This document shows, in pieces, positions 247-63,088 of a DNA stretch of 64,000 nucleotides (its first letter is position 1; the number at the start of each line of letters is the position of its first letter). A model generated the notes under the pieces. That model saw only the letters and a list, made by a program, of their open reading frames with translations. It had not been told where the DNA came from and did no database searches. The DNA is from Bugula neritina (taxonomy: Eukaryota > Animalia > Bryozoa). The stretch spans positions 868,001 through 932,000 of the forward strand of contig OZ037770.1 in NCBI GenBank assembly GCA_964035545.1, read 5' to 3'. A program made the position numbers and the translations under genes.

Positions 247-660
247 ATGTCATTTGACACAAACAAATTATTGGAGCAGCTTACAGCTGTAGAATACGCT
301 GCTCAGGGTTTGCTGGAAGAGAGGCAGAGTATTGTAGCTTTAGATAGAACTCGTAATCACACTCGGGAGGCTCGTACAGCGCTGAAACATGTTGTCTCGG
401 GCAGAGAATCCTTGGCAAATCATGGAAGTAAAACCTGGATGTGTTTTGGCAACACTTTTATTAAAATGAAGAATGACACTGCTCTTAAACTTCTGAATGA
501 ATCTCATTTAGAGTTAGATAGAGAAATTGAAAAGAGTAGAAATGGACTCAGGGATAAACTGAATAATGTGAGAGAGTTGGAGGGCAACTCTCATGCTGCT
601 GGTTTTAATCTGAAGGCTCTTTCACCGGATGAACAGAAAGCTTTAAATCGATTATTGTGA
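247..660 (+). CDS. PDRG1: p53 and DNA damage-regulated protein 1 (prefoldin-like subunit), single coding exon, 137 aa
   Basis: ATG-to-TGA ORF with PDRG1 hallmarks: IVALDRTRNHTREA, KTWMCFGNTFIK, LDREIEKSRNGLRDKLNNVRELEG and C-terminal GFNLKALSPDE; typical length. Confidence 0.93.
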   Translation: MSFDTNKLLEQLTAVEYAAQGLLEERQSIVALDRTRNHTREARTALKHVVSGRESLANHGSKTWMCFGNTFIKMKNDTALKLLNESHLELDREIEKSRNGLRDKLNNVRELEGNSHAAGFNLKALSPDEQKALNRLL

Positions 661-2339
661 AATTGATCTCCCAATTTATTCTCACAGAATGAAATGTGCT
701 CCAGCTTGTTATATATTTTTTGTTAGTTGTTAAGCATATTTTATGCTATCAGTATCTAATATATAGTATAATATAACATGTGGTGCAATGCCGATGGTTC
801 AAACCAAATCTACTCTAATAAGCAGACTGTGCTCCAGCTCATTATTCGCATGTGTTTTGTAGGTTGTTAAGTATATTTTATGTTTGCAGCACCCCATGTA
901 TATAATAATATAATATAACTTATAATGTAATAACAACTTTACTATATTAAAAAGTTTTGCTTAAAAATTCACTTTGCATAGAAGACATACAAACTTGTAG
1001 TAGCTGGTTACCAACTCCTTTTTCGTATATTATTGGAATTTGTTATTTTCATTGAGCCTATTGATTTATCATTCAATTGTATAAATTTTAATACTTTAAT
1101 ACTTTGAACACCAACACCTTGAATAGATCACTAAATTTCTTTCATATAAAACAAGTTTCAAACATGCTATAGTTGTTAGCTTTCAAGTGCAACGCAACTC
1201 CAATACAGTGGATATTTTTCATGTGATTATTTTGAGTTTGCTTTTTGGCATAAGCATAAAATATACAGTGTAACTAATATGTAATAAAATAAGAGTTGGT
1301 ATAATGTCTGTACTTTCAATAGCGAGTGTAGCTTCTTCACATGTGCTAATTTTTCAACGGTGCAGCAATCAACGAGTTTGAAATAAACACTATGACTATC
1401 TTGAAAGCCAGTTCAGCATTATATATAAATTATTCAACTGTTGGAGGATTTTCAAATCTAGCTGACCTGCGGGCACTTTTTCACAGCAAAGGTAATTTAT
1501 ATCATCTACATCAGTTGGTATCATTTAACTTCCAAAATGTCTTCATCTAAAAAAATTTATATTGTAACACTAAAATGTTTTCTTTGGTTATTGCAAAAAA
1601 ATGTTTCGAAAATTTTCAGAAATATTATCGGTGAATTATAACTTTAATATCAAGAAAAGAATTAAGCATAGATAAAATAAAATTACAAAATTGAATGCGT
1701 TTTCATAACAACATAGAAAACACAAACTTGGAACTGACTTCCTAAATGCAAAAAATATAAGGATTACAAACAGTTTTATTTAAACATGAAGCCATACTAA
1801 AAGTAAAATGTGGAGAATATAAGGATATACAGCTATTTGTATTATGTTGTGTTACTCTATAACATTGTATATGTGAAATAAAAGTGTAACGCAACTCAAA
1901 GCAAGACAAAATAAAGTCACGGTGCTCCCCCCACTCTTGGAGTTCAAAGAAAATTCTATGCAGGGACTATTTTGACCTAACTTTTAAAAGGATCAAGTTT
2001 AACTTAGAAAAAGTAAAATCGTTTTAATAATGGATCAGCACACTTCCTGTACTGATGTAAGTGGAGACAACACTGTCCTAAGAGTTGACATATATTAGCC
2101 CGAGTATCTTTACAGTAGCCAGTGGGTGAATGTTTGAGAGCGAGTAGTAGGAGACCCTTAGCGTGTTTGTAGTCTGATGATGAGATTAGAGTCTGAAAGA
2201 GATTAACTAACACGGTTGTATATAGAGGGAGATGAACAGTATTACATCTATCTCTTTCTATATGATATAGTAGTGCAAGAATGAGGTGTATTCTAAGAAA
2301 ACTGAGGCTCTACTGTGATAACTACTAGCATTGTTCGCA

Positions 2340-4040
2340 TCACTGCCATACACATTTACCCATTTCTAGCCCTTTCCTATAGTACTCCAGTGCCTTGCTA
2401 TATTCACCCATGTAATAATAGATCTTACCAAAGTTGGTGTAACTACTAGCAATGTCTGCAGGAACGGCATTACAGCCGTAGAGAGTTATTCTCATCTCCA
2501 GACCTTTCCTACAGTACTCTAGCGCCTTGCTATATTCACCCATGTTACTATATACAGTACCAACATTGTTATAACCACTAGCAATGTGTGCATGCACTGC
2601 ATCACTGCCATAGACAGCTAGTTGCATCTCTAGACCCTTCATGCAGTACTCCAGTGCCTTGCTATATTCACCCATGTTAGTATACACATTACCAATATTG
2701 CGATATGTAATAGCACTGTCTTCGTGCACTGCATCACTGCCATAGACAGCTATCTTCATATCTAGACTCTTCCTATAGTACTCTAGTGCCTTGCTATATT
2801 CACCCATGTTACTATACACATTACCAATATTGCTATAACTTCTAGCAATGTCTGCATGCACTGCATCACTACCATAGACAGCTAGTTGCATCTCTAGACC
2901 CTTCATGCAGTACTCTAGTGCCTTGCTATATTCACCCATGTTAATATACACATTACCAATACTAGTATAACTATTAGCAATGTCTGCATGTACTGCATCA
3001 CTGCCATAGACAGCTTGTCGCATTTCTAGACTCTTCCTATGGTACTGTAGTGCCTTACTATATTCACCCATTTCACAATACACATTACCAATATTGTTAT
3101 AGCCACCAGCAATGGTTGCATGCACTGCATCACTGCCATAGACAGCTAACTGCATCTCTAGACTTTTCTTATAGTACAATAGGGCTTTGCTATATTCATT
3201 CATTCCATGATACACATTACCGACATTGGTATAACTACTAGCAATGTCTGCATGCACTGCGTCACTGCCATAGACTGCTAGCTGGATTTCTAGACCCTTC
3301 CTACAGTACTCTAATGCCTTGCTATATTCACCCATGTTAGTATGCACACTACCAATACTAGTATAACTACTAGCAATGTCTGCATGCACTGCATCACTGC
3401 CATAAACAGCTAGCTGCATCTCTAAACCTTTCCTATAGTACTCCAGTGCCTTGCTATATTCACCCATGTTAGTATGCACATTACCAATACTAGTATAATT
3501 ACCAGCAATGTGTCTATGCACTGCATCACTGCCATAAACAGCTAGCTGCATTTCTAGACCTTTCTTATAGTACTCCAGTGCCTTGCTATATTCACCGGTG
3601 TTAGTATACACATTACCAATATTGCGATATCTAATAGCAATGTCTGCATGCACTGCATCACTGTCATAGACAGCTAGCTGTATCTCTAGACCCTTCATAT
3701 AGTACTCTAGTGCCTTGCTATATTCACCCATTTTACTATGCACAATACCAATATTGTTATAACTACTAGCAATGTCTGCATGCACTGCATCAATGCCATA
3801 AACAGCTAGTTGCATCTCTAGACCTTTCCTATAGTACTCTAGTGCCATGCTATATTCACCAATGTTACTATACACATTACCAATACTAGTATAACTACCA
3901 GCCATGGGTCCATGCACCGCATCACTGCCATAGACAGCTCTGAACATCTCACATCCCCTATTGAAATACTGCAAAGCTTGGTCATAGAGACACATATCTC
4001 TATAGACATTACCAACTCTCATGTAACAAGAAGCTACATC
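2340..4040 (-). repeat. Coding tandem array of ~13 x 132-bp units (44-aa TPR)
   Basis: Consensus DIAxxYxxIGxVYxxMGEYSKALEYYRKGLEMQLAVYGSDAVHA, repeated with high DNA identity (e.g. gtgccttgctatattcacc recurring every 132 bp). Confidence 0.95.
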
Positions 4041-7000
4041 AGGACTAACACTGTTCATCTCTCTACTAGCTCTCTCAATATTCAACATCATGGCCTCTGC
4101 ACTCAGTTCTACAGACATTTTTCCCATATCACCATGGAGCTGGGAAAACAATGGAATACTATCAATACTGCTCAGAATTTCTATGTTAATTTCCAATGAC
4201 TTTGTGTAATGTTCTAATGCAACTTCTGTCTGTCCCAATTTACTATAAACTTTACCAAATGCAGAGTTTATGTCTGCCATATCTATGTGGGTGTTCTGAA
4301 CTTCAGACTCTATCATACTGAGAGCTGAATCAAGATATGACAGAGCTGAGTCATATTCACTCTTACAGCAATGAAGAAGACCAATTTCTACTGATAGAGA
4401 ACTTTTTTCATGTGCATTAACTTTTAACCTATCAAACAATCTTTCTACAATTTGATACTTTTCAGTGCATAAACTGTAATCACCCATTTTTGCATGCAGA
4501 TCTGCAATTCTTCGATAACATTGAGCAACATCAACGTGATCCGAACTGTACAAACTTTTTGTCATAGCTAATGCTCTGTTGTAGAACTCTAGAGAGCTTT
4601 CATAATTTTCAGCTTTTTCATTGAGTTGACCTAAACCACTCAGTAGAAGGGCAATGTCTGGGTGGTTAGTCTGGTCAGTGTGAACTTCTGTCAACTTATC
4701 TAAATGATGAGTCAAGTATTCAACACCTCTATCATGCTCACCTTTTTCTGACTGCACTAAAGCAAGAGAAACTATCAAATCCACGTAATGGCTGCCAAAT
4801 TGTTGCCCTGACCTTTGGGAATACAAAATATCAAAAAGTTTTTGTGACTTATTTGCCAACTCTTCAGCTTGCACATAATGTTTTACATTTTCATAAGCTT
4901 TGCTAGTCACCCTTAATGCTTGTGCAATAATTTCAAAAATGTCTCTGTCCTCAGCTGAATGCTGAGTGTTGTTAGCCTGTTCTCTAACAAATCTGCTTAA
5001 AGTCTGATTCCCTTTTAAGTTGTACTTTGATCTAAGGACAGAAAAAACGTCACCAATCAAAGAGAAGACCTCATGGTAATTGTGAAGCTGATTGGCTGAG
5101 TCAGCTGCTAACACTTTCCATTTTAACCTATCAGATGCAGAGTCTACACAGTTGTCTGCTAACCAAATGAAATACTTAAGACAACTATCATACTTTCTAG
5201 TGGAATACAATAAATATGCAGCCATTTCAATGTATTTTGGCACAACAGTTGACGCATTATTGTTTTCAGTCTGAAGTGTTTTGATCAAATCTTGGGCACT
5301 TTTATCAAATACATCTGCACCCCAATTAGCTTTGAAACTTTTAATAGATTGCTCAAAATCTCCACAAAAAAACTCGACCTCCATTTTTAAAGTCAAACCT
5401 GGGTTAGTTATTGCAACTTGGTTCATCAGTTTTTCTAACACAGCAATGCCTGTTCTTTCACTCTGACAATCAACCTTATCTATGTTTCTCTGAACTGATA
5501 TCTTTACGGGAACAAAGAGAAAAGCTAACAGAACAAACATGTCTCTAGATAAATGATAAATTCCTTTAGTCTGGCATTCAGTGGGAGGATATAAAGAGAA
5601 ATGATCTTCTTGAGTTTCTGATTGTAGGTATGCAGTTGTTCTGATGTATATTGCCAGTGCTGTTATCAAATTCAATTTTATCAATTGTTTGTCAGTCACA
5701 ATGTTCTGCTCTTTCAAATGACATGTTATAGACCAAGGAGTCATTTTATCTAAAGCTATCAACAGTCTTAGGTGATCAACTAACAGTGTTGGATATCGAA
5801 AAATATCACTTTTAACTTTGAGTTTTGTATTGTCAGGAGGGCCAAAGAATTTAAAAGTCGGCAAAAAGTTGTACGCAGCAGCATCTGTTTTCAATAACTT
5901 TAGGCGTTTGTTTATTAAAGTTGAGTTATTTGCTTTTTTTGCTAAAGCAGCTTGAAGGTTTTCAAGAGTCTTATCAAACAGTATTTCCCCATTTCCATAT
6001 GCATATATCATGACAATAGAAGATAACAGATCAGCTATATCTGCTATGTCACCAGCTGGTGACGTAAGTGTCTCAGAGTATAGTTCAGTCAACTGTTCTA
6101 CAGTCAAAATCAAACCCCTGCTACCATCTTCTTTCCCTGTGGGAATATTCCCAGCGTTCTTGAATATTCCATCAATACGAAACCCTACAGTAGCACTATC
6201 TGTGTATGATTTGTCTATTTCAGGAATATTAAAACCCTTCAATGGTGACTCTCCCATATTACCAATTCTAAAGTAGCTATCAACTGCTAGTTTAGTAAAG
6301 TAGTTAATATGAGAGTCTGACTCAACAACAAAGGCATACTCTAGGTCAGAATATAGAGTGGCTGTACCACGGGCAACAGAACCAAGACCAATCACAGCAA
6401 ATGAACAGGGAATATTTAGACCTGATGTACTCAAAGTATCAACACTGGACTGTATGAACTTACTACAGGTTGATATAAAGTTATCACTGCATTTCTGACT
6501 TAGTTCAAATACAGAAGTACTAAACTCAGTGAATGCATCTTTTGCTACAGATAAGTTATCAAGTTTCAGATTACTTGTGTCAATAGAGCTGAAGTCAGTT
6601 TTTGTCTCAGTTCTGTAGTCCTCCAGCAACTTGAGTTGTTTCTTTGTCAGTTTCTGATGTTCCTCATAGCTGAGTGGATGTCTTCCTTCATACCAACAGT
6701 CTTCTATTTGGTAGACTCTCCTCTGTCTCTCCTCACTGAACTCTAGAGCCAGGCATCTGTTAGCTAGTCCATGAGCCTAGAAAACAAAATATGATGGAGC
6801 TGCAGTTGAATGCATACAGTTCTCTCTCCAACAGTTAGCATGTGTTGACAGCACACTTTTCATGAGAATTTCATCTACCTCAACGTAATCTAATCAGCCA
6901 AATTATTATTTAATTACCTGGTCGATAAGAATAATAGGATTATAGCAAACTACCTGCAGATGATGCACCCAGTTTCTACTAGATTCAGCCTTCTTTTGGT

Positions 7001-7049
7001 ATTTTGTGGTCAGTTCTTCTAACTTTAATATGTCTTTGTAGTCCTCCAT
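2340..7049 (-). CDS. Nucleotidyltransferase (DUF294/GlnD-like, pol-beta fold) fused to a TPR-repeat solenoid, ~1510 aa
   Basis: Exon 1 7049-6954 (ATG...HHLQ, donor GTAGTT, phase 0); 177-bp intron; exon 2 6776-2340 (acceptor TTTTCTAG, phase 0, in frame with the 1429-aa ORF). NTase signature FAVIGLGSVARGTATLYSDLEYAF (hGS...DxE) at ~6330-6400, then GFRIDG and a helical segment (KVKSDIFRYP...IRTTAYLQSETQED); diverged TPRs in the middle; ~13 highly similar 44-aa TPRs at the C-terminus. The 3' end is uncertain (see findings). Confidence 0.85.
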
Positions 7050-21520: not shown

Positions 21521-24510
21521 TATTATTATTATTATTGTTGATTGACCGTAGTTTTTTAGCTGGTGTAACCTTTTACCATTGGCCTAGTTATACTAGGCTG
21601 AAATGACTAGAACTTTCCTCAGGATGTGAGCTTATCCTGATCCTAGTAAGGGTGTCTGCTGAATTAATGAGCATTTGTTTTCAGCTACTCCAAGTAGTGT
21701 CAGCCAGTCTACAATCTTGTATAAAGCTCCAAAGGCTCCAGTTACAACGGGATGACTTTTTTGATGTTTTCCAAAGGCGGGTTTATTCTAGTGCTAAATT
21801 CTGATATTTTCCTAACTTTTCGAATTTTTTTCTTTTACTCTGTAGTTAACAGGGACTGTGATATCAATTATCGTTGTTTCAGCATTATGCTTGTCAACTA
21901 CTAATATATCGGGTCTCCTAACTTTGATGACTACGTCAGTGTGTATGTTAAAATCTTACAAGGTTTTCACGTTATCATTTTCCAGTACTTATTCTGCTTG
22001 ATGGCCGTACCAATTTTTATATTTCTGAAACCCACGAAGTTCACACAACTACTATTGAAATTATCAATGCCAAAAGGTTGTGTTTTTTCTTATATTCTCC
22101 TTCTGCTACCTTCTCAAACTCACTCAATACGTGCATCGAAGTTTTGTCTCTTGCGTTACACATTCCACACTTCTTGCTACCCTGTTCTCTCATCATAGCC
22201 ACTTTATAATTTCTAGTAGTGAATAGTTGATTTTGCGCAGCTGTCAGCAGTCCTTCTGTTTCTTTTTTCAGCCAACCATACTTCAACCAGTTCCAGGAAA
22301 ATGCTTTCATGTCTTTCACCATTTTGATGTATTGACCACGTGAAGCTTTTCTTTACACTCATCAGTTCTTTCTGTCACTTTATCATTATTTAGTTCTACC
22401 GCTGTTCTGTCTTTTAGGAAGGTATTCAGTGTGGTGTTTCTATCAGTCTATGTTATATTTATGTAGTCTGACATGCTGCAGTTTTCAATCTTTATGCATT
22501 TTTCAGTTGACAACATTCTTCTACCGCCTTCCCTTCTGCTAAAATACAGCCTGCCTACATCTGCTCTCGGATAGGGTGCACGGTTTGTTGTCATTAGCTT
22601 CCTTGTCTTTCAGTCTATATTTTTTAGCTCATGAAACAGTTCAGTCAAGTATTCTAGCTGTGTAATGCACTGCTGTTACTGCCCATGTGTTTATTGCTTT
22701 GATTGTGTTCTCACCATTCAGTTTTGAATCCAGAACTTTTCTTATTTGTTTGTAGTACTCCTTGATCTTATTTTTCATTTCATATATTTGTATTCCATCA
22801 ATCTCAAGAACTCCTAGATATTTATACGGCTTCTCACCCAGATCTTTGATTACCTGTTCATCAGGCAAACTGATTCCTGTGTCCTTAATTTTCTTTCCCT
22901 TTCTCATAACCAGTGTGGCACATTTTTTAATCCAAATTTCATTTCTATATTCCTTGTGAAGATCCCGGCAGTGTTTACCAAAGCTTCCAGTTCCCACTTT
23001 GATTTCCTATTTACCTTCAGGTCATCCACATATAGGAGATGGTTTGTTTTCTGTCTCGTCGAAATTTGCATCATTGAGCCGCTTCTGTCATGCGAATCGG
23101 TAGTTGGAGAAAAGGGATAGAGATAAAGAGTCTCCTTGGAAAATTCTTAGTTTGATCTTTATTTCTCCTATCTTTTCTTCCAGGTATTTCAGTTGTGTTT
23201 TCCAGGTTTCATGCTTTTTCTTATCAACCTTATGACATTAATTGCTATTCCAGTTGTTTGCATCGTTTCTAAGATCTAATTTCCTTGTCTTTACATATGC
23301 TCCAATTTGTTGCTAACTTTATTTAGTCATTCTGCATTGGTATTATTTTTAGTTGGCTGACCCCATATATTTTATCAGAATGCTTTTGATTTCCTTGTCA
23401 GGTGCCTCTTTAGATGTACGTATTCATTTCCTCGTAATTCTTGATAAAAGCGCTTATCATTGTAAACATTGTGTTCTGATTATATTAATCAACTCATTCT
23501 GTATATCTGTTTATCTTCTGGCTTACAGCTCTCAGGTTTTGCTTCAGTTTTTCAATCACTACACCACACTCTTTGTTCTTTATCCTATATTTTTCTTCAA
23601 CCATTCTTCTCAATGAATCATTGTAAGCTCTACTTTTTCACTCTGCTATTTTACTCAAGTCTGATCTAATTTCTTTTTATTTCTTCTGCAGTCGTATTTT
23701 CCATACTTGTACATTGTCAGTTTTTCTTTTTCCTTTTTGTTACACACTTGTTCTGTTACTATTTTTCGCACAAGCCATGGTGGTGTTATTAAGCTCAATG
23801 GTATTAATAATCTCAACACAGTTTAGCACATCATTAATCTGTTTTACTGCCTGTAGTAATTTGACCCTCTCAATGTGCCTAAGGGCTCTTAGTGTTGGTC
23901 GATCATTAGATAGTTTGTTATGCTCATTTATAATTTTTCTACTAACACTTTTTCTACCTCTGAACTAGGTACTCTTAAAATTCTCATGGCTGATTTATAT
24001 GCTATCTCATGTTGTACTATAACATCCTCTATTTGCAAATTTAGCTCTTCATTATCTTCTTCACCAATTGATGTGCTTAGGTCTTGCAAGGTTCCTTCTT
24101 CAATCTTATGGAGTTCTTTTTCCATAAAATGCTTGTGTTTCTTCATAGTTCTTGCTTAATCCGCTAGTCTCTATTCGCTGATGTTAAACCCTCCTCTGTT
24201 TTCCAGCCTTTGCACATTCTTTTTAAATAATTCCTTGATCCGGGTCTACAGAGCTCATACATTGTTTTTCTATAACCTCTTAATTTGGGTGTACTTTTGA
24301 AGTAGCATTTCATGACAACTTTGTTGTCTTCTCTTGAGTATCTTCTTCTAGTTGTGCCATTAACGGGTTGACGGCCGTAGGTTGCCTGGCCCTCCACATA
24401 CCCACTGCCAGACGAGACATGCCATGTTTAGTTAGACATACCATTAACGTCGTTGGCTTTATTAGTTCTATTTTAATGGATCATATTATTATTTTTAATT
24501 ATTATTATTA
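21521..24510 (-). mobile_element. Decayed RLE-type non-LTR retrotransposon, R4/Dong-like
   Basis: Minus-strand fragments in order: N-terminal RRRYSREDNKVVMKCYFKS..RGYRK (~24270-24350); RT motifs IFQGDSLS (~23121-23145) and HLLYVDDLK (~23015-23041); YKYLGVLE; ETEGLLTAAQNQ; degenerate Zn knuckle CGMC..TSMHVLS; RLE motif RRPDILVVD..IIDITVP..KYQNLALEI (~21785-21920). (TAA)n at both ends; many stops, frameshifts and deletions. Confidence 0.88.
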
Positions 24511-40304: not shown

Positions 40305-41787
40305 TTATGTGTACGGTTGAGTGGTTTTGTTTTGAAATTAACATTGTTTGCGTATTACTACGCTGGAATGTCTTAACTAGCGTCTGTCAAATGCGCAAGT
40401 AAAAATTTGCGTTTATGTTTACACGTGCTGGAAAGTTCTTTTCGTTTGTTAAGGGAGGATAATTCCGGTTGGTTTAAAATTACATATTTTTCATAGTTGC
40501 ATAAGTTACATCTGTTAGTTATGTTTGAGTATGATTTACAAATTTTTAAAATATTCCATTTTAGGCTGAATTTAGTGTTGTTGTCTTTTAAATTCCAGAT
40601 GTGTTTGCTGAGCTGTGTGTTGTTAGCTTTATCTGCATGTAGGAAAGAGGCTTTATGGTTATTGAATCGTGTTTTGAAGGTGGTTGAACAGAGTCATATG
40701 TACGATTGGTTACAGTTATTGTCATGTCTTGTTACAGTTGCTTGGTATATCACGTTTTTGTATAAGCATTTACCATTTAATGGACAGTGGGAGAGTTGTT
40801 TACAGTTACATTGTGTGTTGTTTGAGTTAGTAGTGGTAGTAGGGGTGTATGCAGTTTTAAGTTTGTGTTGGTTTGAGCCATCAATAATATTTTTCATGTT
40901 GGGCATGCACGAATAACTAATTTTTATGGTTTTCCTATTAAAAATTTTTGCCTAGTTGGTTGGATGGTGGAAAGCATTGGTCGATAATTTGAAGAAATTT
41001 CTTCTCTATTTTGGTTTTTACTGTTGAACTAAAAGGTGGGTTGTACCACAATATGTTTCTATTTCTATTTTTATTATTGTTGCTGGATTTAGGTGTCGGG
41101 TTATATTTTAATTTATAGTCATATCCGCTGTTTGATAGTTTGATAAAAAGCCCCACATGACCTAGCTAAATCAATCACAACTAAGCTTTTATTACATATA
41201 CATATTATTGATGGCTCAAACCAACACAAACTTAAAACTGCATACACCCCTACTACCACTACTAAACCAAACAACACACAATGTAACTGTAAACAACCCT
41301 CCCACTGTCCATTAAATGGTAAATGCTTATACAAAAACGTGATATACCAAGCAACTGTAACAAGCCATGACAATAACTGTAACCAATCGTACATAGGACT
41401 CTGTTCAACCACCTTCAAAACACGATTCAATAACCATAAAGCCTCTTTCCTACATGCAGATAAAGCCAACAACACGCAACTCAGCAGACACATCTGGAAT
41501 TTAAAAGACAACAACACGAAATTCAGCCTAAAATGGAATATTTTAAAAATTTGTAAATCATACTCAAACATAACTAACAGATGTAACTTATGCAACTATG
41601 AAAAATATGTAATTTTAAACCAACCGGAATTATCCTCCCTTAACAAACGAAAAGAACTTTCCAGCACGTGTAAACATAAACGCAAACTTTTACTTGCGCA
41701 TTTGACAGACGCTAGTTAAGACATTCCAGCGTAGTAATACGCAAACAATGTTAATTTCAAAACAAAACCACTCAACCGTACACATAA

Positions 41788-50156: not shown

Positions 50157-52457
50157 CTAAGATTTAAATATTTTTATTTTATCCTTCAAAAGTGTGAACT
50201 TAGCAGGCATGACTTCAAACTTCTCATTGTCCATTAAATAGCATGGGTTCTCTGTCTTTGGTTCCAGGTGTATGCTAGACACTAGGAGGGATTCCGAATG
50301 CAAGGAACTCAGTCTTTCTGTCAGAAGTTGACTCTTTGAGGTCGGAGGGCTGACTGTGACCTCCAGAGCTGCAGCTAAAACACAGTAAAGGTCAAGGTCA
50401 ACATGAGTCACCAGTGAGCTGTTGGTTGTAAGCAAGGGTGACCGAATCCCCAGCCCTAAGTATGAAGTCTAGGGTGGAAAGCTCTCATAAAAACTATGGA
50501 TCTTTGCTTTATAGTTGAAATGTTAGAAGTAAAAGGTGCAAATAAATGTCAACATTAAAAGTGTAAGTAGATAAACCAACCTTGACATTCAGAGTCCTGC
50601 TTAGGAACTGTGGCTATATTAAACTGAGGACTAGATATCTCTTTTCTGTAGGTTTCACCACATTCCGGGTTATTTATCTGCAAAAAAACCAAAGCATAAG
50701 AGAAAACAACTACAAGTGCTACTCTGTGCAATCACTTTGACTACTGACTGACTGACAATGAGCATAGACTTAGAGCCACACCTGTAACCTGGGGTCAGGC
50801 TTGGCGGGTGGGGACGCCTTCCTATTGTCTGTGGGCCACCACCAAACAGATTTCTCAGGCTTAGCCTTGACTTCAGTCTCCTCAGGAGTGTAGCAGTTCC
50901 TGCACCCATCACAAGGGGGAGATAACTCTGCTGAAGCTTGCACATCTATTGGCCAATCACTGAATAACACCTGTTAACAGAGAATGTATTTTTTGAATTT
51001 AAAACAAAGAGGATCATGCTTGCTTAGGGTTAAAGTTTAAGACTTTTCTGTACTTTTTCGAATTTTAGAAGCCCAATCTCTAATAAAATATTATTGATTG
51101 TTAATAATAGAACAGTGCTATGTCTTCCTGGAAAAGCTATAAAACATAACACGACTGATTGAATTTCTTAAAGTGAAGTGTGTTAGGGGTGGGAGTAAAG
51201 GCCACCCTACCTTTTTGAGGTAGCAGTAGTACTCCTTCAGTGGACCAGGGAAGTACCAGTATTTAGACTTGAGTCTGTCTACATCTGAGTGGACACCCCA
51301 CTTGAGGTCGGACAGCACGTAGACATTCTTGTTACCCTCCCTACCGCCTTCCTCAGACTCGGAGCTAAGTTCCTGTGCAGACGGCTCCGTCTGCTGCACT
51401 TCTATTACATCAGCTAGAGTATATCTAGAGAAAAGTTAGTGTGTATCAGAGGATATCTACAGAAATTTTAGTGTTTATGAGAGTATATCTACAGAAAATT
51501 CAGTGTGGATCAGACAGAGGATATCTAAAGAAAAGTCAATGTGCTATGTAAGAAAGAGACCAATTGAAAGACAGAAAAAAAATTTCAAAAATAAAAAGTG
51601 CAAGTACGCTTTGAGCAGAAAAAGTAAAAATCTTTAAAAATTGAACACTATAAAAGAGATTAGGATGTATAGAAAAGAAACACAAAGTAAAACCAGCCTG
51701 TTATCACCAAAAAGAACAAACTACTCAGGATAGAAAAGGGGAGACTCACTTGTTAGCTATAATGGCCATCGATGCCTCACAATATCGCTCCACCTCGAGT
51801 TCACGCTTAGGAAATATTCGAGTGGCAAAATTGTTGTTAGATCCAAATGGAAGGACGCCTGCAATAAGACATGTGGCACGTATACGCAGTGGTGAAAAAA
51901 TTAAAAAAAATTTAAAAATCTTTTAATGCACTAGTTTTGTTTTTAAATTTTAATATATCAAGATAGATGAGAAAATTGTTGGAAATATATTGAAAATGCG
52001 TACCGATAGGTAAGCGTTGTGCAATTTCATCTCCTCGTCTTAGAAGGCCAGTAACAATTTCAGAAAGTGTGCCATCACCCCCGGCTACGACTATCGCATC
52101 GACAATATTTTTATCCAATACTCCCATATACTCCTTAGCCTGACCTTCGTGCTCTGTTCTTACCACGTGAATCTCAATACCAGCTAGGTGGAGCAACGGC
52201 AAAACATGTTTCTCTAACAAGTACTTAGTTTTCCCGTTTTTAGCGGCTGGGTTGAGGAATACAATAATTTTCCTAGGTCGCTCACTAGCACTAATGGTTT
52301 GTCTGCCGATTTCACGAGCTTTGAGGCAATATTCTCGCATGAGCTGATCTTCCTTGTGCCATTTTATTGCGTATTTAGAGGCGTATAAGCCACAAGCAGT
52401 AAAGAATATAGACTTTTTCCAATGTGTCCTCAATGTGGTGAATACTTTGATTATCAT
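50157..52457 (-). CDS. AGK: Acylglycerol kinase, mitochondrial, 6 exons, 426 aa
   Basis: Exons 52457-52004, 51858-51750, 51424-51211, 50970-50782, 50677-50581, 50374-50157 (1281 nt, in frame). N-terminal LRTHWKKSIFF; DAGK-type motifs VFLNPAA, VVAGGDGTLSEIVTGLLRR, PIGVLPFG; SKYWYFPGPLK; PCDGCRNC; DNEKFEVMP. Confidence 0.95.
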
Positions 52458-57700: not shown

Positions 57701-58082
57701 TAAATTATAATTTCACAGCCCAAGTTTTCTCAACATCTTTTTAATGTGTTCCATTTTTTATTCATAACCAATTATTAGACAACTAAACACATTTGAAGAC
57801 GAGGAAAAAAATGCATTCAGTTTTCAAGCTAGAAGTCCGAGTGATGGTTCTAGTCTGAGAAACTAGACTATATTTATCATCTGCCTCAATTCTCCCTTTA
57901 ATTTAAGTTACGAGTGTAAAACTTTGGACTAGATTATAAGCATGGAGTGGAGATAGAAGAAGTAATTATCAAAGGTACTTCTCTGTTCACAGGAAATGAT
58001 GTATAAAGACCCGGAGAGGTGGAGCTTAGCTTTTCAGTCGTATGTACAGTTGACTATGCTGGACAATCACAATGCTAAACAG
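54790..58082 (+). CDS. TK2: Deoxynucleoside kinase / thymidine kinase 2-like, 5' part (the rest lies beyond the window or was not recognised)
   Basis: Exons 56928-57004, 57430-57561 (VVVEGNIGVGKSTFL P-loop; EPVALWKDIKGHNAL) and 57993-58082 (MMYKDPERWSLAFQSYVQLTMLDNH). First exon is 54790-54835 or 56403-56517, both phase 1. The ERS-motif exon was not found. TK2 versus multisubstrate dNK cannot be resolved. Confidence 0.88.
55446..55866. mobile_element. MITE family C, copy 2
   Basis: TIRs gggtcattttacttaatttagtacacactgg / gctggtgtgtactaaatgaagtaaactgactc; the left ~170 bp match 26550-26720. Confidence 0.75.
56403..56517 (+). CDS. TK2: Alternative first exon of TK2/dNK encoding a putative mitochondrial presequence
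   Basis: MYRCLRCVLYAQTTFRVRLPTVHRWNPWRQLNLYIRYS-G|GTAGGT: 7 Arg, no Asp/Glu; phase 1 matches the exon at 56928. Confidence 0.65.
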
Positions 58083-58089
58083 GTGATGC

Positions 58090-58708
58090 TACTAGTAGTA
58101 GTAGTACTAGTAGTTAGAGTAGCAGTAGTAGTAGTAGTAGTAGTAGTAGTTAGAGTAGCAGTAGTAGTAGTAGTAGTAGTACTAGTAGTTAGACTAGTAG
58201 TAGTAGTACTAGTAGTAGTAGTAGTAGTATAGTAGTAGTAGTAGTAGTAGTAGTAGTTAGAGTAGTAGTAGTAGTACTAGTAGTAGTAGTACTAGTAGTT
58301 AGAGTAGTAGTAGTAGTACTAGTAGTAGTAGTACTAGTAGTTAGAGTAGTAGTAGTAGTAGTAGTACTACTAGTAGTAGTAGTAGTAGTAGTAGTACTAG
58401 TAGTATAGTAGTAGTTAGAGTAGTACTAGTAGCAGTAGTGGTAGTAGTAGTACTAGTAGTGGTAGTAGTAGTACTAGTAGCAGTAGTGATAGTAGTAGTA
58501 CTAGTAGTGGTAGTAGTAGTACTAGTAGTAGTAGTGATAGTAGTAGTACTAGTAGTGGTAGTAGTAGTACTAGTAGTAGTACTAGTAGTAGTAGTAGTAG
58601 TATAGTAGTAGTTAGAGTAGTACTAGTAGCAGTAGTGGTAGTAGTAGTAGTACTACTACTAGTAGTAGTAGTATATAGTATAGCAGTAGTAGTAGCAGTA
58701 GTAGTAGT
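58090..58708. repeat. ~620-bp (GTA)n compound microsatellite in a TK2/dNK intron
   Basis: Seen directly; starts just after the 58082 donor. Confidence 0.97.
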
Positions 58709-58806
58709 TGTAGTATAATGTTGTTTACAATTGCTGAGTTATTTATATATCCTAACAGTAATATGCTATTAATACATATGTCGTAGATTTGTGATTCATT
58801 CCTATG

Positions 58807-58842
<36 letters not shown>

Positions 58843-59935
58843 CTTACACTTATGATCAGCAGTAGTTCTTTCTATGCTGTCATACTACTACTACCTATGG
58901 CATGTTATTGCTAACTCTATATGTCATAGAGTTAGCAATAACTCTATGTATATGTATGTATAATCTGACATAGCATGTTAGATTATGTCATATAATCTCT
59001 CTGGTCTTTTAACTAACTTTCCTCTTTGAGTTCTATATGCACCTGGAAGATTTAAATTTGAACTATTTTCAAATTGTGAACGTTTACTAGTAGACTGTGG
59101 CCTCATAAGTACTCATGCAACCTCCAAATCAGCAAATGTTTACTCAAAACATTGACTCACTGATGAGCTCAATAATAAACCACTTGCTATGTCATTAACA
59201 ATTAACTTGAAATCATTTCCATCCAAAGAAAACAAGTCAGCTGCTACTGTATGAAAAGGATATTTAGGTATCTCACTAGCCATCATTGGCTGCCTACATT
59301 GCTGCTCAATGTTTTCCCTACATTGCACGCATGACTGAATCATTTCCTCAATTTGATTGTTTATTCCAGGCCAAAACACCACGTCTTTGCCAATGCCTTT
59401 GTTTTCACAATGCCTTGATGTGACTTGTGTAATTTTTGCAAAATTTCTGTTTGTTTTGACATTGGTACTATCAGCCCAACAAATAGAAATTCATCACAAA
59501 TTCTAATTTCATTACGCCATGGCCAATATTTTCTCCCAACAAAGCTACATGATTTTTCATCTGGAGGCCATCCATTAATTACAATCAGTTTGAGTGCCTG
59601 TAATTCTCTGTCTCTTAAAACTGCTTGTTTGTATTCTGCTTTAGCTTTATCAGAACAAACTATGACTTTAGGCAAATTTTCATAGGATCAAATTCAGCAA
59701 CATTTACAAATGTCTCTACATCAGGATAGGATGCTTTACTAAGCATATCTTTGTTCACTTGCCTAGGATCTAAACTAAGTCTTATTTGATTGTTAGGATG
59801 TACTGTGAACCCAAACCTGCAGGTTCATTGCATTTTTTGATAACTTCTAATTCTTCGAGCTTACCAAGCTCTGTTTTTAGCTTTGGTTTTACATTTATGG
59901 GAACAGGCCCACTACTGCCAACTACTGGCTTAGCC

Positions 59936-61210
59936 TCAGGTCTTAGTGTAATGTGGTGTTCTATGTCTAATTTTCCAAGCCCCCTCAAAAACATCCTTTA
60001 ATTCTTCAATTATCAACTTACTGCTATCAGTATCTACTTGCTCTACATGATCTATTCCAATTAGACCAAGCTCCTTGATGGTGGGCAAGCCTAAAAGAGG
60101 TGTGTTTTTAGCAGTGGTTACATAGAACTCAGACTTGTAGGTTTTACCCCTAAAACTGAATGGCAGTTCTACGACTCCATCTACTGGAATAACATGACCA
60201 GTGTAGCCTGTGAGCTTTGTACCAGCTTTTCTAAGTTCCCTACTTACATCAAGATTTTCAAAAATATCTCTTGTCCAAACATTAACTTGTGCACCTGTAT
60301 CAACTTTCATGGCAACCTTAGTTTTACCAAAAACAAAATTTTCAAACCAAACTGAAGAATTGCATGCATTAAGTTTAACATTGCTACACAATCCTACATT
60401 AAACATGCATGGTTCCTCATTGACATCTGTAGTAGCATCTGGTACTTGTACAGCATTAGTTGTAGATTTCATTATAGACTTAGATCTACATACCTTAGCA
60501 AAGTGATTAAATTTACCACATTTGTTACAGGATTTTCCATACGCTGGGCAGTGTCTCCTTCTGTGACTAGATCCGCAGCTATGGCAGTTGTTAATAATAT
60601 CCATTGTATGTTTTTTTGGCTGAAAATTGTTTGAGTAATTTCTTTTCCTTATTGCATCTACATCTGCTGGTTGCTCTGGTGCAGCACTCGCAAGGTTTCT
60701 CTGTATTATCTCCTTGGCTCTCATGCGTTGTGTTACGTTTTCTAGCGTTAACTGATCTTCTGTCAGTTGCTGTAGCTCAATTGACAGAGCCTTGTCTTTC
60801 ATCCCTGTCAGCAATCTATATTTAATGTTATCATTTACCGCATTGCCAAATTCGCAATGTTGTGCTAAAGAGTATAGTGCCCTGATATACTCCTCATTGT
60901 TTTCATTAGGTTCCTGAGTTCTTCCATTGAACTGCACAATGTGATGTGCCTTGTTTGTCCTAGGTTTGAAATATGTGTCAAATGCTTCCTTTACCTTATC
61001 ATATTTCTTTCTGTCATCATTTGTGAGTGGTAGCTGTATAAAAATGTCCTCGGCTGCTTCTCCCATCGTATATAATAGACTGTCTATTTGTAAGTCGTCA
61101 GCTTCTTTTGACATTTTTGTCACATTGTGATATCTGCTATATCTTCGTATCCACTCACCCCATCCACTTGGGTTAGTGAAGTCAAATGATGAAGGTGCTC
61201 TGGTAGCCAT
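59936..61210 (-). CDS. Gypsy Gag-protease
   Basis: Gag N-terminus W.EWIRRYSRY; two Zn knuckles CHSCGSSH..C / CNKCGKFNHFAKVC; aspartic protease KVDTGAQVNV. Reading into pol is broken by one extra G in a G run at ~59980-59984. Confidence 0.9.
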   Translation of the reverse strand: MATRAPSSFDFTNPSGWGEWIRRYSRYHNVTKMSKEADDLQIDSLLYTMGEAAEDIFIQLPLTNDDRKKYDKVKEAFDTYFKPRTNKAHHIVQFNGRTQEPNENNEEYIRALYSLAQHCEFGNAVNDNIKYRLLTGMKDKALSIELQQLTEDQLTLENVTQRMRAKEIIQRNLASAAPEQPADVDAIRKRNYSNNFQPKKHTMDIINNCHSCGSSHRRRHCPAYGKSCNKCGKFNHFAKVCRSKSIMKSTTNAVQVPDATTDVNEEPCMFNVGLCSNVKLNACNSSVWFENFVFGKTKVAMKVDTGAQVNVWTRDIFENLDVSRELRKAGTKLTGYTGHVIPVDGVVELPFSFRGKTYKSEFYVTTAKNTPLLGLPTIKELGLIGIDHVEQVDTDSSKLIIEELKDVFEGAWKIRHRTPHYTKT

Positions 61211-62289: not shown

Positions 62290-63088
62290 CTTACAACACT
62301 TAGCACCCTAAAATCAGTGTTATGTTCTTGGGTTGTATAACATCAAAAGGACGTGTTGGTCGACTCAGTATTTGCTCTAGAATGATGTTAATACCCAAAA
62401 ATATATAGATAATCTCAATGCTAAACTTCTTCCAATTATAAAAAAAAAATTTAAATGAAGTTTACATGTTTCAAGATGACAATGCACTATGCCATCGGGC
62501 AAACACTATTAAAGAGTGGATGAAAATGCAGAGGGTCTCAATGCTCAACTGGCCAGCACAAAGCCCTGACTTGAAGCCTATAAAAAAATTATGGCCAAGA
62601 ATGGCTAAAATAGTCTCCTCAAAGAAGCCAACAACTTATAGAGTCTGTAATTCATGCATATGGCATCATGTCGTGACTGAAAACGAGTTGAAGAAGAATA
62701 AATAAGAATAAAGGCTGGTCAACAGAATATTGATATTAAAATTGAAAGCATTGTGTGTTGCAATGCTGCTATAAGGTGTATAACAAGTCACATATAATAT
62801 TTTTCTATATTTTAGGTAAAATATTCTGATATATCATACAGTACACACAAATTGTGAGAGCATCGAATAATTTCCGTATACGTATAGTATCTCATTGTTT
62901 CACCCAAATTTTGAGATGATGTAAAAAAGACAATAATAATTTTATATGAATGGGATTAGGAGATCTTAAGGATCATTTTGGTAGACAAAATGCTTATGGA
63001 TTAGGGCATTTATTATGTCGTAAAATTAGCTTGGAAAATTGCTATTATGGAAAACAGTGAGGTGTCCTTAAACTTTTTCACAGCGCTG
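62290..63088 (+). mobile_element. Tc1/mariner transposon, 5'-truncated and degenerate
   Basis: Catalytic-domain remnants GCITSKG..VGRL, FQDDNALCH and WPAQSPDLKPIK (N>K and catalytic E>K relative to SPDLNPIE); right TIR ...gtgtccttaaactttttcacagcgctg followed by TA. Confidence 0.88.

What the first reader, a model, noticed from the sequence alone, without database searches (positions are those of the whole stretch)
2340..7049. Nucleotidyltransferase fused to a hypervariable TPR array: candidate animal sensor-enzyme (immune-receptor-like) system
Seen: an N-terminal pol-beta-fold motif with its acidic pair intact (GLGSVARGTATLYSDLE, plus a possible third acid in GFRIDG), a helical domain, then a TPR solenoid ending in ~13 near-identical 44-aa units. 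Known: hGS..DxD/E enzymes of this superfamily (GlnD/GlnE, MNT, OAS, cGAS/CD-NTase) either NMPylate proteins or make nucleotide second messengers, and internally conserved TPR/WD arrays act as the ligand sensors of fungal NLRs. Inference: the repeats recognise a ligand and the NTase is the output, with no NACHT/NB-ARC switch. That would be an uncharacterised signalling route parallel to cGAS/OAS.
Basis: partly seen in the sequence, partly recalled or inferred. Interest (0 to 1): 0.88.

Follow-up and report, generated by a model that had tools for sequence, protein, structure and literature searches.

The report
Animal DrrA-like AMPylase with variable TPRs
A marine bryozoan carries about 60 genes that join an enzyme built like the Legionella protein-tagging effector DrrA to a fast-changing binding groove, an arrangement shared with amphioxus and with bacteria living inside cells, which points to an untested animal recognise-and-tag system, most likely defensive.

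Summary
Observation confirmed. A two-exon gene (intron spliced in three RNA-type runs; ~1,510 aa) encodes a pol-beta nucleotidyltransferase, a HEPN-like helical domain, divergent TPRs and 12.2 units of 44 aa (83% identical), with no P-loop switch. The confident model matches Legionella DrrA (Z 25.7) and GlnE (Z 21/20), not cGAS/OAS. The acidic triad is almost invariant across bryozoans, amphioxus and bacteria, so protein AMPylation is likelier than second-messenger synthesis. The genome (Bugula-like) gives 65 matches. Close paralogues carry roughly 6-24 units. Known TPR ligand-contact positions show dN/dS about 1.9 and 2.3 in two subfamilies, against 0.4-0.5 elsewhere. Kin with the same architecture occur in Watersipora, Branchiostoma (hundreds of hits), Owenia and intracellular bacteria (Neochlamydia NEX2 effectors, Rickettsiaceae, Amoebophilaceae); Ciona has the enzyme domain. 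One branch separates animal from bacterial copies; direction is unresolved. This copy has lost the family's ~290-aa C-terminal cap and has Leu for a near-invariant Pro, so it may be a decaying or altered member. No paper describing the animal family was found. The scan noted this family before on other DNA of this genome (s1-456718). Activity, ligand and immune role are untested.

The parts
6954..7049 (-). Exon 1, 32 codons from the ATG; no signal peptide
   Evidence: conserved 55-94% in 18 paralogue loci; covered by RNA-type contigs
6777..6953 (-). 177-nt phase-0 GT-AG intron
   Evidence: joint 6775/6953 in runs X10, X5, X12; depth near 0 inside
6426..6776 (-). N-terminal helical bundle of the DrrA/GlnE-type enzyme (exon-2 residues 1-117)
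   Evidence: model pLDDT >86 in 10-residue blocks; aligned to DrrA from residue 1
5934..6416 (-). Pol-beta nucleotidyltransferase core (DUF294/SidM_N-like). G132-S133 at 6383-6378, D144 at 6347-6345, E146 at 6341-6339, D202 at 6173-6171. This copy has Leu at 141 (6356-6354) where the family has Pro
5451..5933 (-). HEPN-like / DUF294_C helical substrate-binding domain with near-invariant K322 and R327; no RxxxxH RNase motif
3987..5429 (-). Divergent helical/TPR solenoid; no NACHT, NB-ARC or Walker A
2343..3986 (-). Array of 12 full 44-aa (132-nt) TPR units plus a 20-aa stub; variable at TPR positions 2, 5, 6, 9, 12, 13
2040..2342 (-). Early stop (2342-2340) and out-of-frame, partly deleted remnant of the conserved ~290-aa C-terminal cap of intact paralogues
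   Evidence: 91-95% identity over 2040-2255 to intact caps, with several gaps and the last third missing

Best explanation
The gene is one of about 60 members of a bryozoan birth-and-death family of cytosolic DrrA/GlnE-type protein nucleotidyltransferases. The N-terminal ~440 residues bind Mg-NTP (most likely ATP) through D144/E146/D202 and transfer NMP to a hydroxyl side chain of a protein (class shown by fold and residues; activity inferred). The 44-aa TPR array is a variable recognition groove: unit number and six concave-face residues per unit diversify, so each paralogue binds different partners (diversification shown; binding inferred). Binding of a foreign or altered protein either brings the substrate to the enzyme or switches it on, as Rab binding does allosterically for DrrA. 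The NMP tag then disables the target or starts a cell response (inferred). The likeliest context is defence against intracellular microbes or other non-self, in a colonial filter feeder that hosts symbionts. The module is shared by descent with effectors of intracellular bacteria. This copy keeps enzyme and array but has lost the C-terminal cap; I put it at about even odds of being still functional.
For: Fold: DrrA Z 25.7 (rmsd 4.2, 321 aligned, model 1-441), GlnE Z 21.4 and 20.4; next unrelated full-length rows Z <=7.7; no cGAS/OAS listed. The profile finds DrrA by sequence, E 1e-7, over both domains. G-x11-D-x-E matches DrrA G-x11-D110-x-D112 (PMC8097203); DrrA's triad is D110/D112/D150 (PMC7815794). 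D144 and E146 are 100%, D202 94-100%, K322 81-100% and R327 94-100% conserved in bryozoan, amphioxus and bacterial sets. Enzyme dN/dS is 0.21-0.28 among the ten closest paralogues. 65 matches in the genome, in tandem clusters. About 6-24 units estimated from frame lengths. 59 different six-residue face codes in 69 units. Face dN / unit dS is 1.89 (bootstrap 1.24-2.97) and 2.29 (1.52-3.39) in two subfamilies versus 0.38 and 0.49 for the scaffold; these positions are the ligand contacts of HOP TPRs (PMC1261162), and fungal NLR TPRs evolve the same way (PMC4986451). Spliced transcripts of the subfamily. Large expansion in Branchiostoma.
Against: No activity, substrate, ligand or infection data. 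Identity to DrrA is only 14%, and DrrA D249 aligns to Ser/Thr. D202 = DrrA D150 is inferred, not superposed. For this gene's 11 units alone the face ratio is 1.43 with an interval (0.80-2.47) that includes 1. Pairwise dN/dS among converting repeats is approximate. RNA contigs are 85-99% alike, so they show the subfamily, not this copy, to be transcribed. Neochlamydia NEX2 expanded under birth-and-death with purifying selection and possibly drift (PMC4209131), so expansion alone does not prove immunity.
Confidence: 0.5

Rival explanations
1. Captured weapon, not receptor: a constitutive or lightly gated NMP-transferase whose TPR array only aims it at targets (proteins of intracellular microbes, or of competitors and foulers), as presumed for the endosymbiont effectors.
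For: Same enzyme + 42-44-aa TPR layout in Neochlamydia NEX2 (F-box + DUF294 + TPR), which carry type III secretion signals (PMC4209131), and in Rickettsiaceae, Holosporaceae, Amoebophilaceae. No switch domain.
Against: No signal peptide or membrane segment, so export is unlikely. An ungated AMPylase in 60 copies would risk self-toxicity. DrrA itself is allosterically gated (PMC7815794).
Confidence: 0.2
2. Second-messenger receptor: ligand binding makes the enzyme synthesise a cyclic or linear oligonucleotide.
For: Same superfamily. The Hailong oligo-dA synthase HalB is a weak fold match (Z 5.9). cGAS-like domain + TPR fusions exist in oysters (PMC8195603). One member of this wider group was proposed as an adenylyl cyclase (PMC3710099).
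Against: All four significant Foldseek hits and the top four VIA hits are protein-NMPylating enzymes; no cGAS, OAS or CD-NTase in either list of 50.
Confidence: 0.1
3. Allorecognition: the variable arrays read self versus non-self of neighbouring colonies and the enzyme triggers rejection, like fungal het NLRs.
For: Evolutionary regime matches fungal incompatibility NLRs; bryozoans are colonial (own knowledge).
Against: The family is also hugely expanded in solitary amphioxus and present in an annelid. The protein is cytosolic. No linkage data.
Confidence: 0.07
4. Largely neutral tandem amplification of a foreign gene; this copy is a young pseudogene and the repeats vary by slippage and conversion.
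For: This copy has an early stop, a decayed cap and four private changes at otherwise invariant columns, more than any of nine close paralogues (0-3). Several paralogues carry stops or truncations.
Against: Purifying selection on the enzyme (0.21, also for this copy versus the others), excess amino-acid change confined to the binding face, spliced transcripts, retention across bryozoan genera and phyla. The neighbouring paralogue ends at the same point yet keeps a 2,000-codon frame.
Confidence: 0.13

Closest known systems
Legionella DrrA/SidM N-terminal AMPylase (PDB 6YX5, 3NKU; Pfam SidM_N)
   Same: Whole two-domain fold (Z 25.7), G-x11-D-x-D/E motif, HEPN-like lobe without RNase residues; detectable by profile (E 1e-7)
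   Different: 14% identity; Glu at the second acid; no GEF or PI4P-binding domains; a TPR solenoid instead; host-encoded, with an intron, about 60 copies
GlnE/GlnD (GS-ATase; DUF294 + DUF294_C)
   Same: Fold (Z 21.4, 20.4), DUF294 above cut-off, acidic triad
   Different: Bacterial nitrogen-control enzymes regulated by PII, without TPR arrays
Neochlamydia NEX2 family (F-box/OTU + DUF294 + TPR; PMC4209131)
   Same: Direct homologue (tblastn E 2e-14 over 87% of the enzyme part, 11 places on plasmid pS13), C-terminal TPR array, birth-and-death expansion
   Different: No F-box or OTU here (an Owenia relative has OTU); 44- versus 42-aa units; animal gene, not a secreted bacterial effector
Fungal NLRs with internally conserved TPR arrays (PMC4986451)
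   Same: N-terminal enzyme plus 42-44-aa repeats with number variation and positive selection on the concave face
   Different: No NACHT/NB-ARC; identity of units (83% nt) is around, not clearly above, their 85% criterion
cGAS/cGLR, OAS, CD-NTase
   Same: Pol-beta superfamily; expanded in marine invertebrates
   Different: Different lobe architecture; not among the fold matches
Metazoan AMPylases FICD and SelO
   Same: Protein AMPylation; FICD also uses TPRs for target recruitment (PMC8097203)
   Different: Unrelated catalytic folds; single-copy, conserved genes

Membership tests
DrrA/GlnE-type (DUF294 + HEPN-like) protein NMP-transferases | Pol-beta core followed by a HEPN-like helical lobe | tested here: met
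DrrA/GlnE-type (DUF294 + HEPN-like) protein NMP-transferases | G-x11-D-x-D/E motif | tested here: met
   G132, D144, E146; PMC8097203
DrrA/GlnE-type (DUF294 + HEPN-like) protein NMP-transferases | Third acid (DrrA D150, GlnE D753) | tested here: inconclusive
   D202 is 94-100% conserved in all groups and suitably placed; residue-level superposition not available
DrrA/GlnE-type (DUF294 + HEPN-like) protein NMP-transferases | Transfers NMP to a protein hydroxyl | not testable with these tools
   needs an assay
DrrA/SidM proper | Rab1 GEF and P4M domains after the AMPylase | tested here: not met
   only TPR families follow; SidM_N below cut-off (16.3 vs 27)
Neochlamydia NEX2 | DUF294 domain with C-terminal TPR array | tested here: met
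Neochlamydia NEX2 | N-terminal F-box (or OTU), chlamydial gene | tested here: not met
   no F-box/OTU hit; intron-bearing animal gene; separate side of the tree
NLR / STAND receptors | Central NACHT or NB-ARC ATPase | tested here: not met
NLR / STAND receptors | Repeat sensor with number variation and positive selection on the concave face | tested here: met
   between paralogues; between individuals not tested
cGAS/cGLR/OAS/CD-NTase | Mab-21/OAS two-lobe fold | tested here: not met
   no Pfam hit; absent from fold lists
cGAS/cGLR/OAS/CD-NTase | Makes a cyclic or 2'-5' oligonucleotide | not testable with these tools
   needs an assay
Active HEPN RNases | RxxxxH motif | tested here: not met

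The most novel reading that the evidence does not exclude
Bryozoans, amphioxus and other marine invertebrates run a diversified intracellular receptor system without a STAND switch, in which variable TPR arrays detect non-self proteins and directly gate a DrrA-type AMPylase. This would be a third class of animal AMPylase and a new immune-receptor type, shared with (and exchanged once with) the effector arsenal of intracellular bacteria.
Probability: 0.35. Interest if true: 0.9.

Novelty: new variant of a known kind. Interest (0 to 1): 0.72.

Why it matters
A 2021 review of metazoan AMPylation names only FICD and SelO as animal enzymes and treats DrrA and GS-ATase as bacterial (PMC8097203). A DrrA-class family in tens to hundreds of copies in several animal phyla, with antibody-like diversification of a binding face, would add a new writer of AMPylation and probably a new kind of innate receptor. 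It would also give a natural code between repeat residues and targets. The many uncharacterised DUF294-TPR effectors of amoebal and arthropod endosymbionts would get a testable activity too. Databases now hide the family under labels such as KLC1, TTC28 or 'Protein-PII uridylyltransferase N-terminal domain'.

Tried and rejected
Single-sequence PDB search gave only DrrA at E 0.5; the profile and fold searches were needed. A single-sequence model of enzyme plus first TPRs failed (pLDDT 37), so no autoinhibition geometry is claimed. Assembly error as the cause of the early stop: rejected, because several separate gaps follow it and the neighbouring paralogue ends at the same point. Bacterial contamination: rejected (spliced intron, animal neighbours, 16-Mb contig, bryozoan orthologues). 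Viral origin: no relative in IMG/VR contigs. Direction of transfer: not claimed, no outgroup. Ten literature searches found no description of the animal family; subscription papers are not covered.
Full report
Observation. The finding is a real gene on the minus strand. Exon 1 (7049-6954, 32 codons) is followed by a 177-nt GT-AG intron and a second exon open for 1,478 codons to a stop at 2340. Contigs of three RNA-type runs from three studies skip exactly this intron and have no depth inside it. They are 85-99% alike, so they show transcription of the subfamily rather than of this copy. Exon 1 is conserved in 18 paralogue loci. The repeat array is 12.2 x 132 nt at 83% matches.

Organism. The genome is 216 Mb in 321 contigs. 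One paralogue is nearly identical to a Bugula neritina protein (branches 0.017 and 0.013), and the best named relatives are from Bugula and Watersipora. I read it as B. neritina or a close relative (inference).

The enzyme. Pfam gives DUF294 just above its cut-off and a weak SidM_N hit. A profile of 102 relatives finds Legionella DrrA at E 1e-7 over both domains. The alignment-based model is confident (pLDDT 92.7, pTM 0.93). Its best matches are DrrA (Z 25.7, 321 residues aligned, model 1-441) and the two halves of GlnE (Z 21.4, 20.4), followed by HEPN domains and aminoglycoside NTases. No cGAS, OAS or CD-NTase is among the 50 rows of either search. In exon-2 numbering G132-x11-D144-x-E146 reproduces DrrA's G-x11-D110-x-D112 (PMC8097203). 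D202 is the likely counterpart of D150, the third acid (PMC7815794); this last match is inferred. These acids, K322 and R327 are nearly invariant in bryozoan, amphioxus and bacterial members. The helical lobe lacks the RNase motif, and the protein has no Walker A, signal peptide or membrane segment. The class is therefore that of protein-NMPylating enzymes acting in the cytosol.

The family in this genome. The enzyme part has 65 matches, mostly in tandem clusters on contigs 2, 5, 6 and 7, most with open frames of 860-2,270 codons. Ten lie within 0.6 Mb around the window at 85-98% identity to each other. Among them the enzyme evolves at dN/dS 0.21-0.28. Cap-bearing neighbours have an estimated 6, 10, 12, 15, 18 and 24 units (from frame lengths).

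The repeats. In 69 units from five close genes, variation concentrates at unit positions 30, 33, 34, 37, 40 and 41, which are TPR positions 2, 5, 6, 9, 12 and 13. These are the residues that HOP TPR domains use to bind ligands (PMC1261162). I fixed this set after seeing the first subfamily, so the independent test is the second subfamily: 68 units from 16 genes, entropy permutation p 1e-5, face dN over unit dS 2.29 (bootstrap 1.52-3.39) against 0.49 for the scaffold. The first subfamily gives 1.89 (1.24-2.97) against 0.38; this gene alone gives 1.43 (0.80-2.47). 59 of 69 units have their own six-residue code, and the nearest unit lies in another gene in 33 of 69 cases, which suggests exchange between genes. 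Fungal NLR TPRs show the same regime (PMC4986451). The ratios are pairwise counts among converting repeats and are approximate.

This copy. Intact neighbours end in a conserved ~290-aa cap after the last unit. Here the frame stops 20 residues into a thirteenth unit. A cap remnant lies out of frame at 2040-2330, 91-95% identical to intact caps over 215 nt but with several gaps and without its last third. The adjacent paralogue 28 kb upstream stops at the same point and still has a 2,000-codon frame; a third appears to end inside the cap. This copy also has four private changes at columns invariant in 18 paralogues, including Leu for the Pro of the TPYSD motif (98% conserved; DrrA has Glu there). 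Its dN/dS against the others is still 0.21. It is either a cap-less variant or a young pseudogene.

Distribution. The enzyme domain has 846 relatives among 50%-identity representatives. Named animal kin are Watersipora, Bugula, Branchiostoma (823 hits from an amphioxus query, 115 or more of the best 120 from that genus), Ciona and Owenia, one Owenia protein being OTU + two enzyme domains + TPR. The named bacterial kin are mostly intracellular lineages: Parachlamydiaceae, Rhabdochlamydiaceae, Rickettsiaceae, Holosporaceae, Amoebophilaceae, Legionellaceae, besides unclassified bins. Those checked carry TPR arrays, often of 42-44-aa units. A Neochlamydia plasmid holds 11 matches; the best is F-box + DUF294 + TPR, the NEX2 family, whose tested members have type III secretion signals (PMC4209131). 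In a 50-sequence tree one branch (98/97) separates all bacterial from all named animal rows. This fits a single old exchange, but without an outgroup the direction is open; the midpoint falls among animals. Rows lacking enough of the domain were left out. No viral relative was found.

Mechanism. Shown: fold class, conserved catalytic acids, purifying selection on the enzyme, diversifying binding face, copy and unit-number variation, spliced transcripts of the subfamily, no STAND switch. Inferred: the array binds a variable protein ligand; binding presents the substrate or activates the enzyme, as Rab binding does for DrrA (PMC7815794); a protein is NMPylated; the outcome is defensive. I give this 0.5, a pure targeting weapon 0.2, neutral amplification 0.13, second-messenger synthesis 0.1 and allorecognition 0.07.

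Novelty. The catalytic class and the bacterial architecture are known. The HEPN survey lists the GlnD/GlnE/DUF294_C/DrrA group as bacterial (PMC3710099), and the review of metazoan AMPylation lists only FICD and SelO in animals. I found no paper on the animal family. It is not an NLR, not a cGLR and not DrrA proper; it works most like a DrrA-type AMPylase with an NLR-style repeat. The scan noted the same family earlier at other loci of this genome (s1-456718 and others); my reading was set down before that look-up and each point above was tested here. Verdict: new variant of a known kind, interest 0.72.

Noticed in passing
window 247-660 +: Single-exon 137-aa gene with a weak Prefoldin_2 hit; looks like PDRG1 (name from memory); convergent with the finding, ending about 1.4 kb from the cap remnant
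   Followed up: partly
window 51912-52457 -: First exon of an acylglycerol kinase-like gene (DAGK_cat E 2e-18, Tim54-like)
   Followed up: partly
window 59140-61210 -: Broken Ty3/gypsy-type LTR retrotransposon: gag-protease frame and fragmented downstream pieces
   Followed up: partly
window 22041-24397 -: Fragmented non-LTR retrotransposon-like reading frames in a T-rich stretch (from memory)
   Followed up: no
window 40497-41719: Two near-identical adjacent copies of a stretch whose + strand encodes a GIY-YIG/Penelope-like fragment (from memory)
   Followed up: no
window 57996-58232 +: Exon resembling a deoxynucleoside kinase, running into a long TAG-type microsatellite at 58093-58715
   Followed up: no
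window 62466-62705 +: Tc1/mariner-like transposase fragment (from memory)
   Followed up: no
P0149 (Owenia), P0025/P0042/P0050 (Branchiostoma), P0112, P0132, P0134: Relatives with two or three tandem enzyme domains in one chain, in animals and in bacteria; the Owenia protein adds an OTU domain as in NEX2
   Followed up: partly
L107:203-14541: Probably bacterial locus: double-enzyme gene followed by a gene with faint TIR and NB-ARC hits and a TPR gene
   Followed up: no
repeat unit spacer, window 2343-3986: Each unit carries an off-frame TGA in its GGC AGT GAT spacer, so a frame slip in the array ends translation within one unit; three independent or shared truncations end this way
   Followed up: partly
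L060, L067: Metagenome bin labelled Rickettsia typhi carries 2,700-2,800-aa members; the label was not checked and may be a misassignment
   Followed up: no
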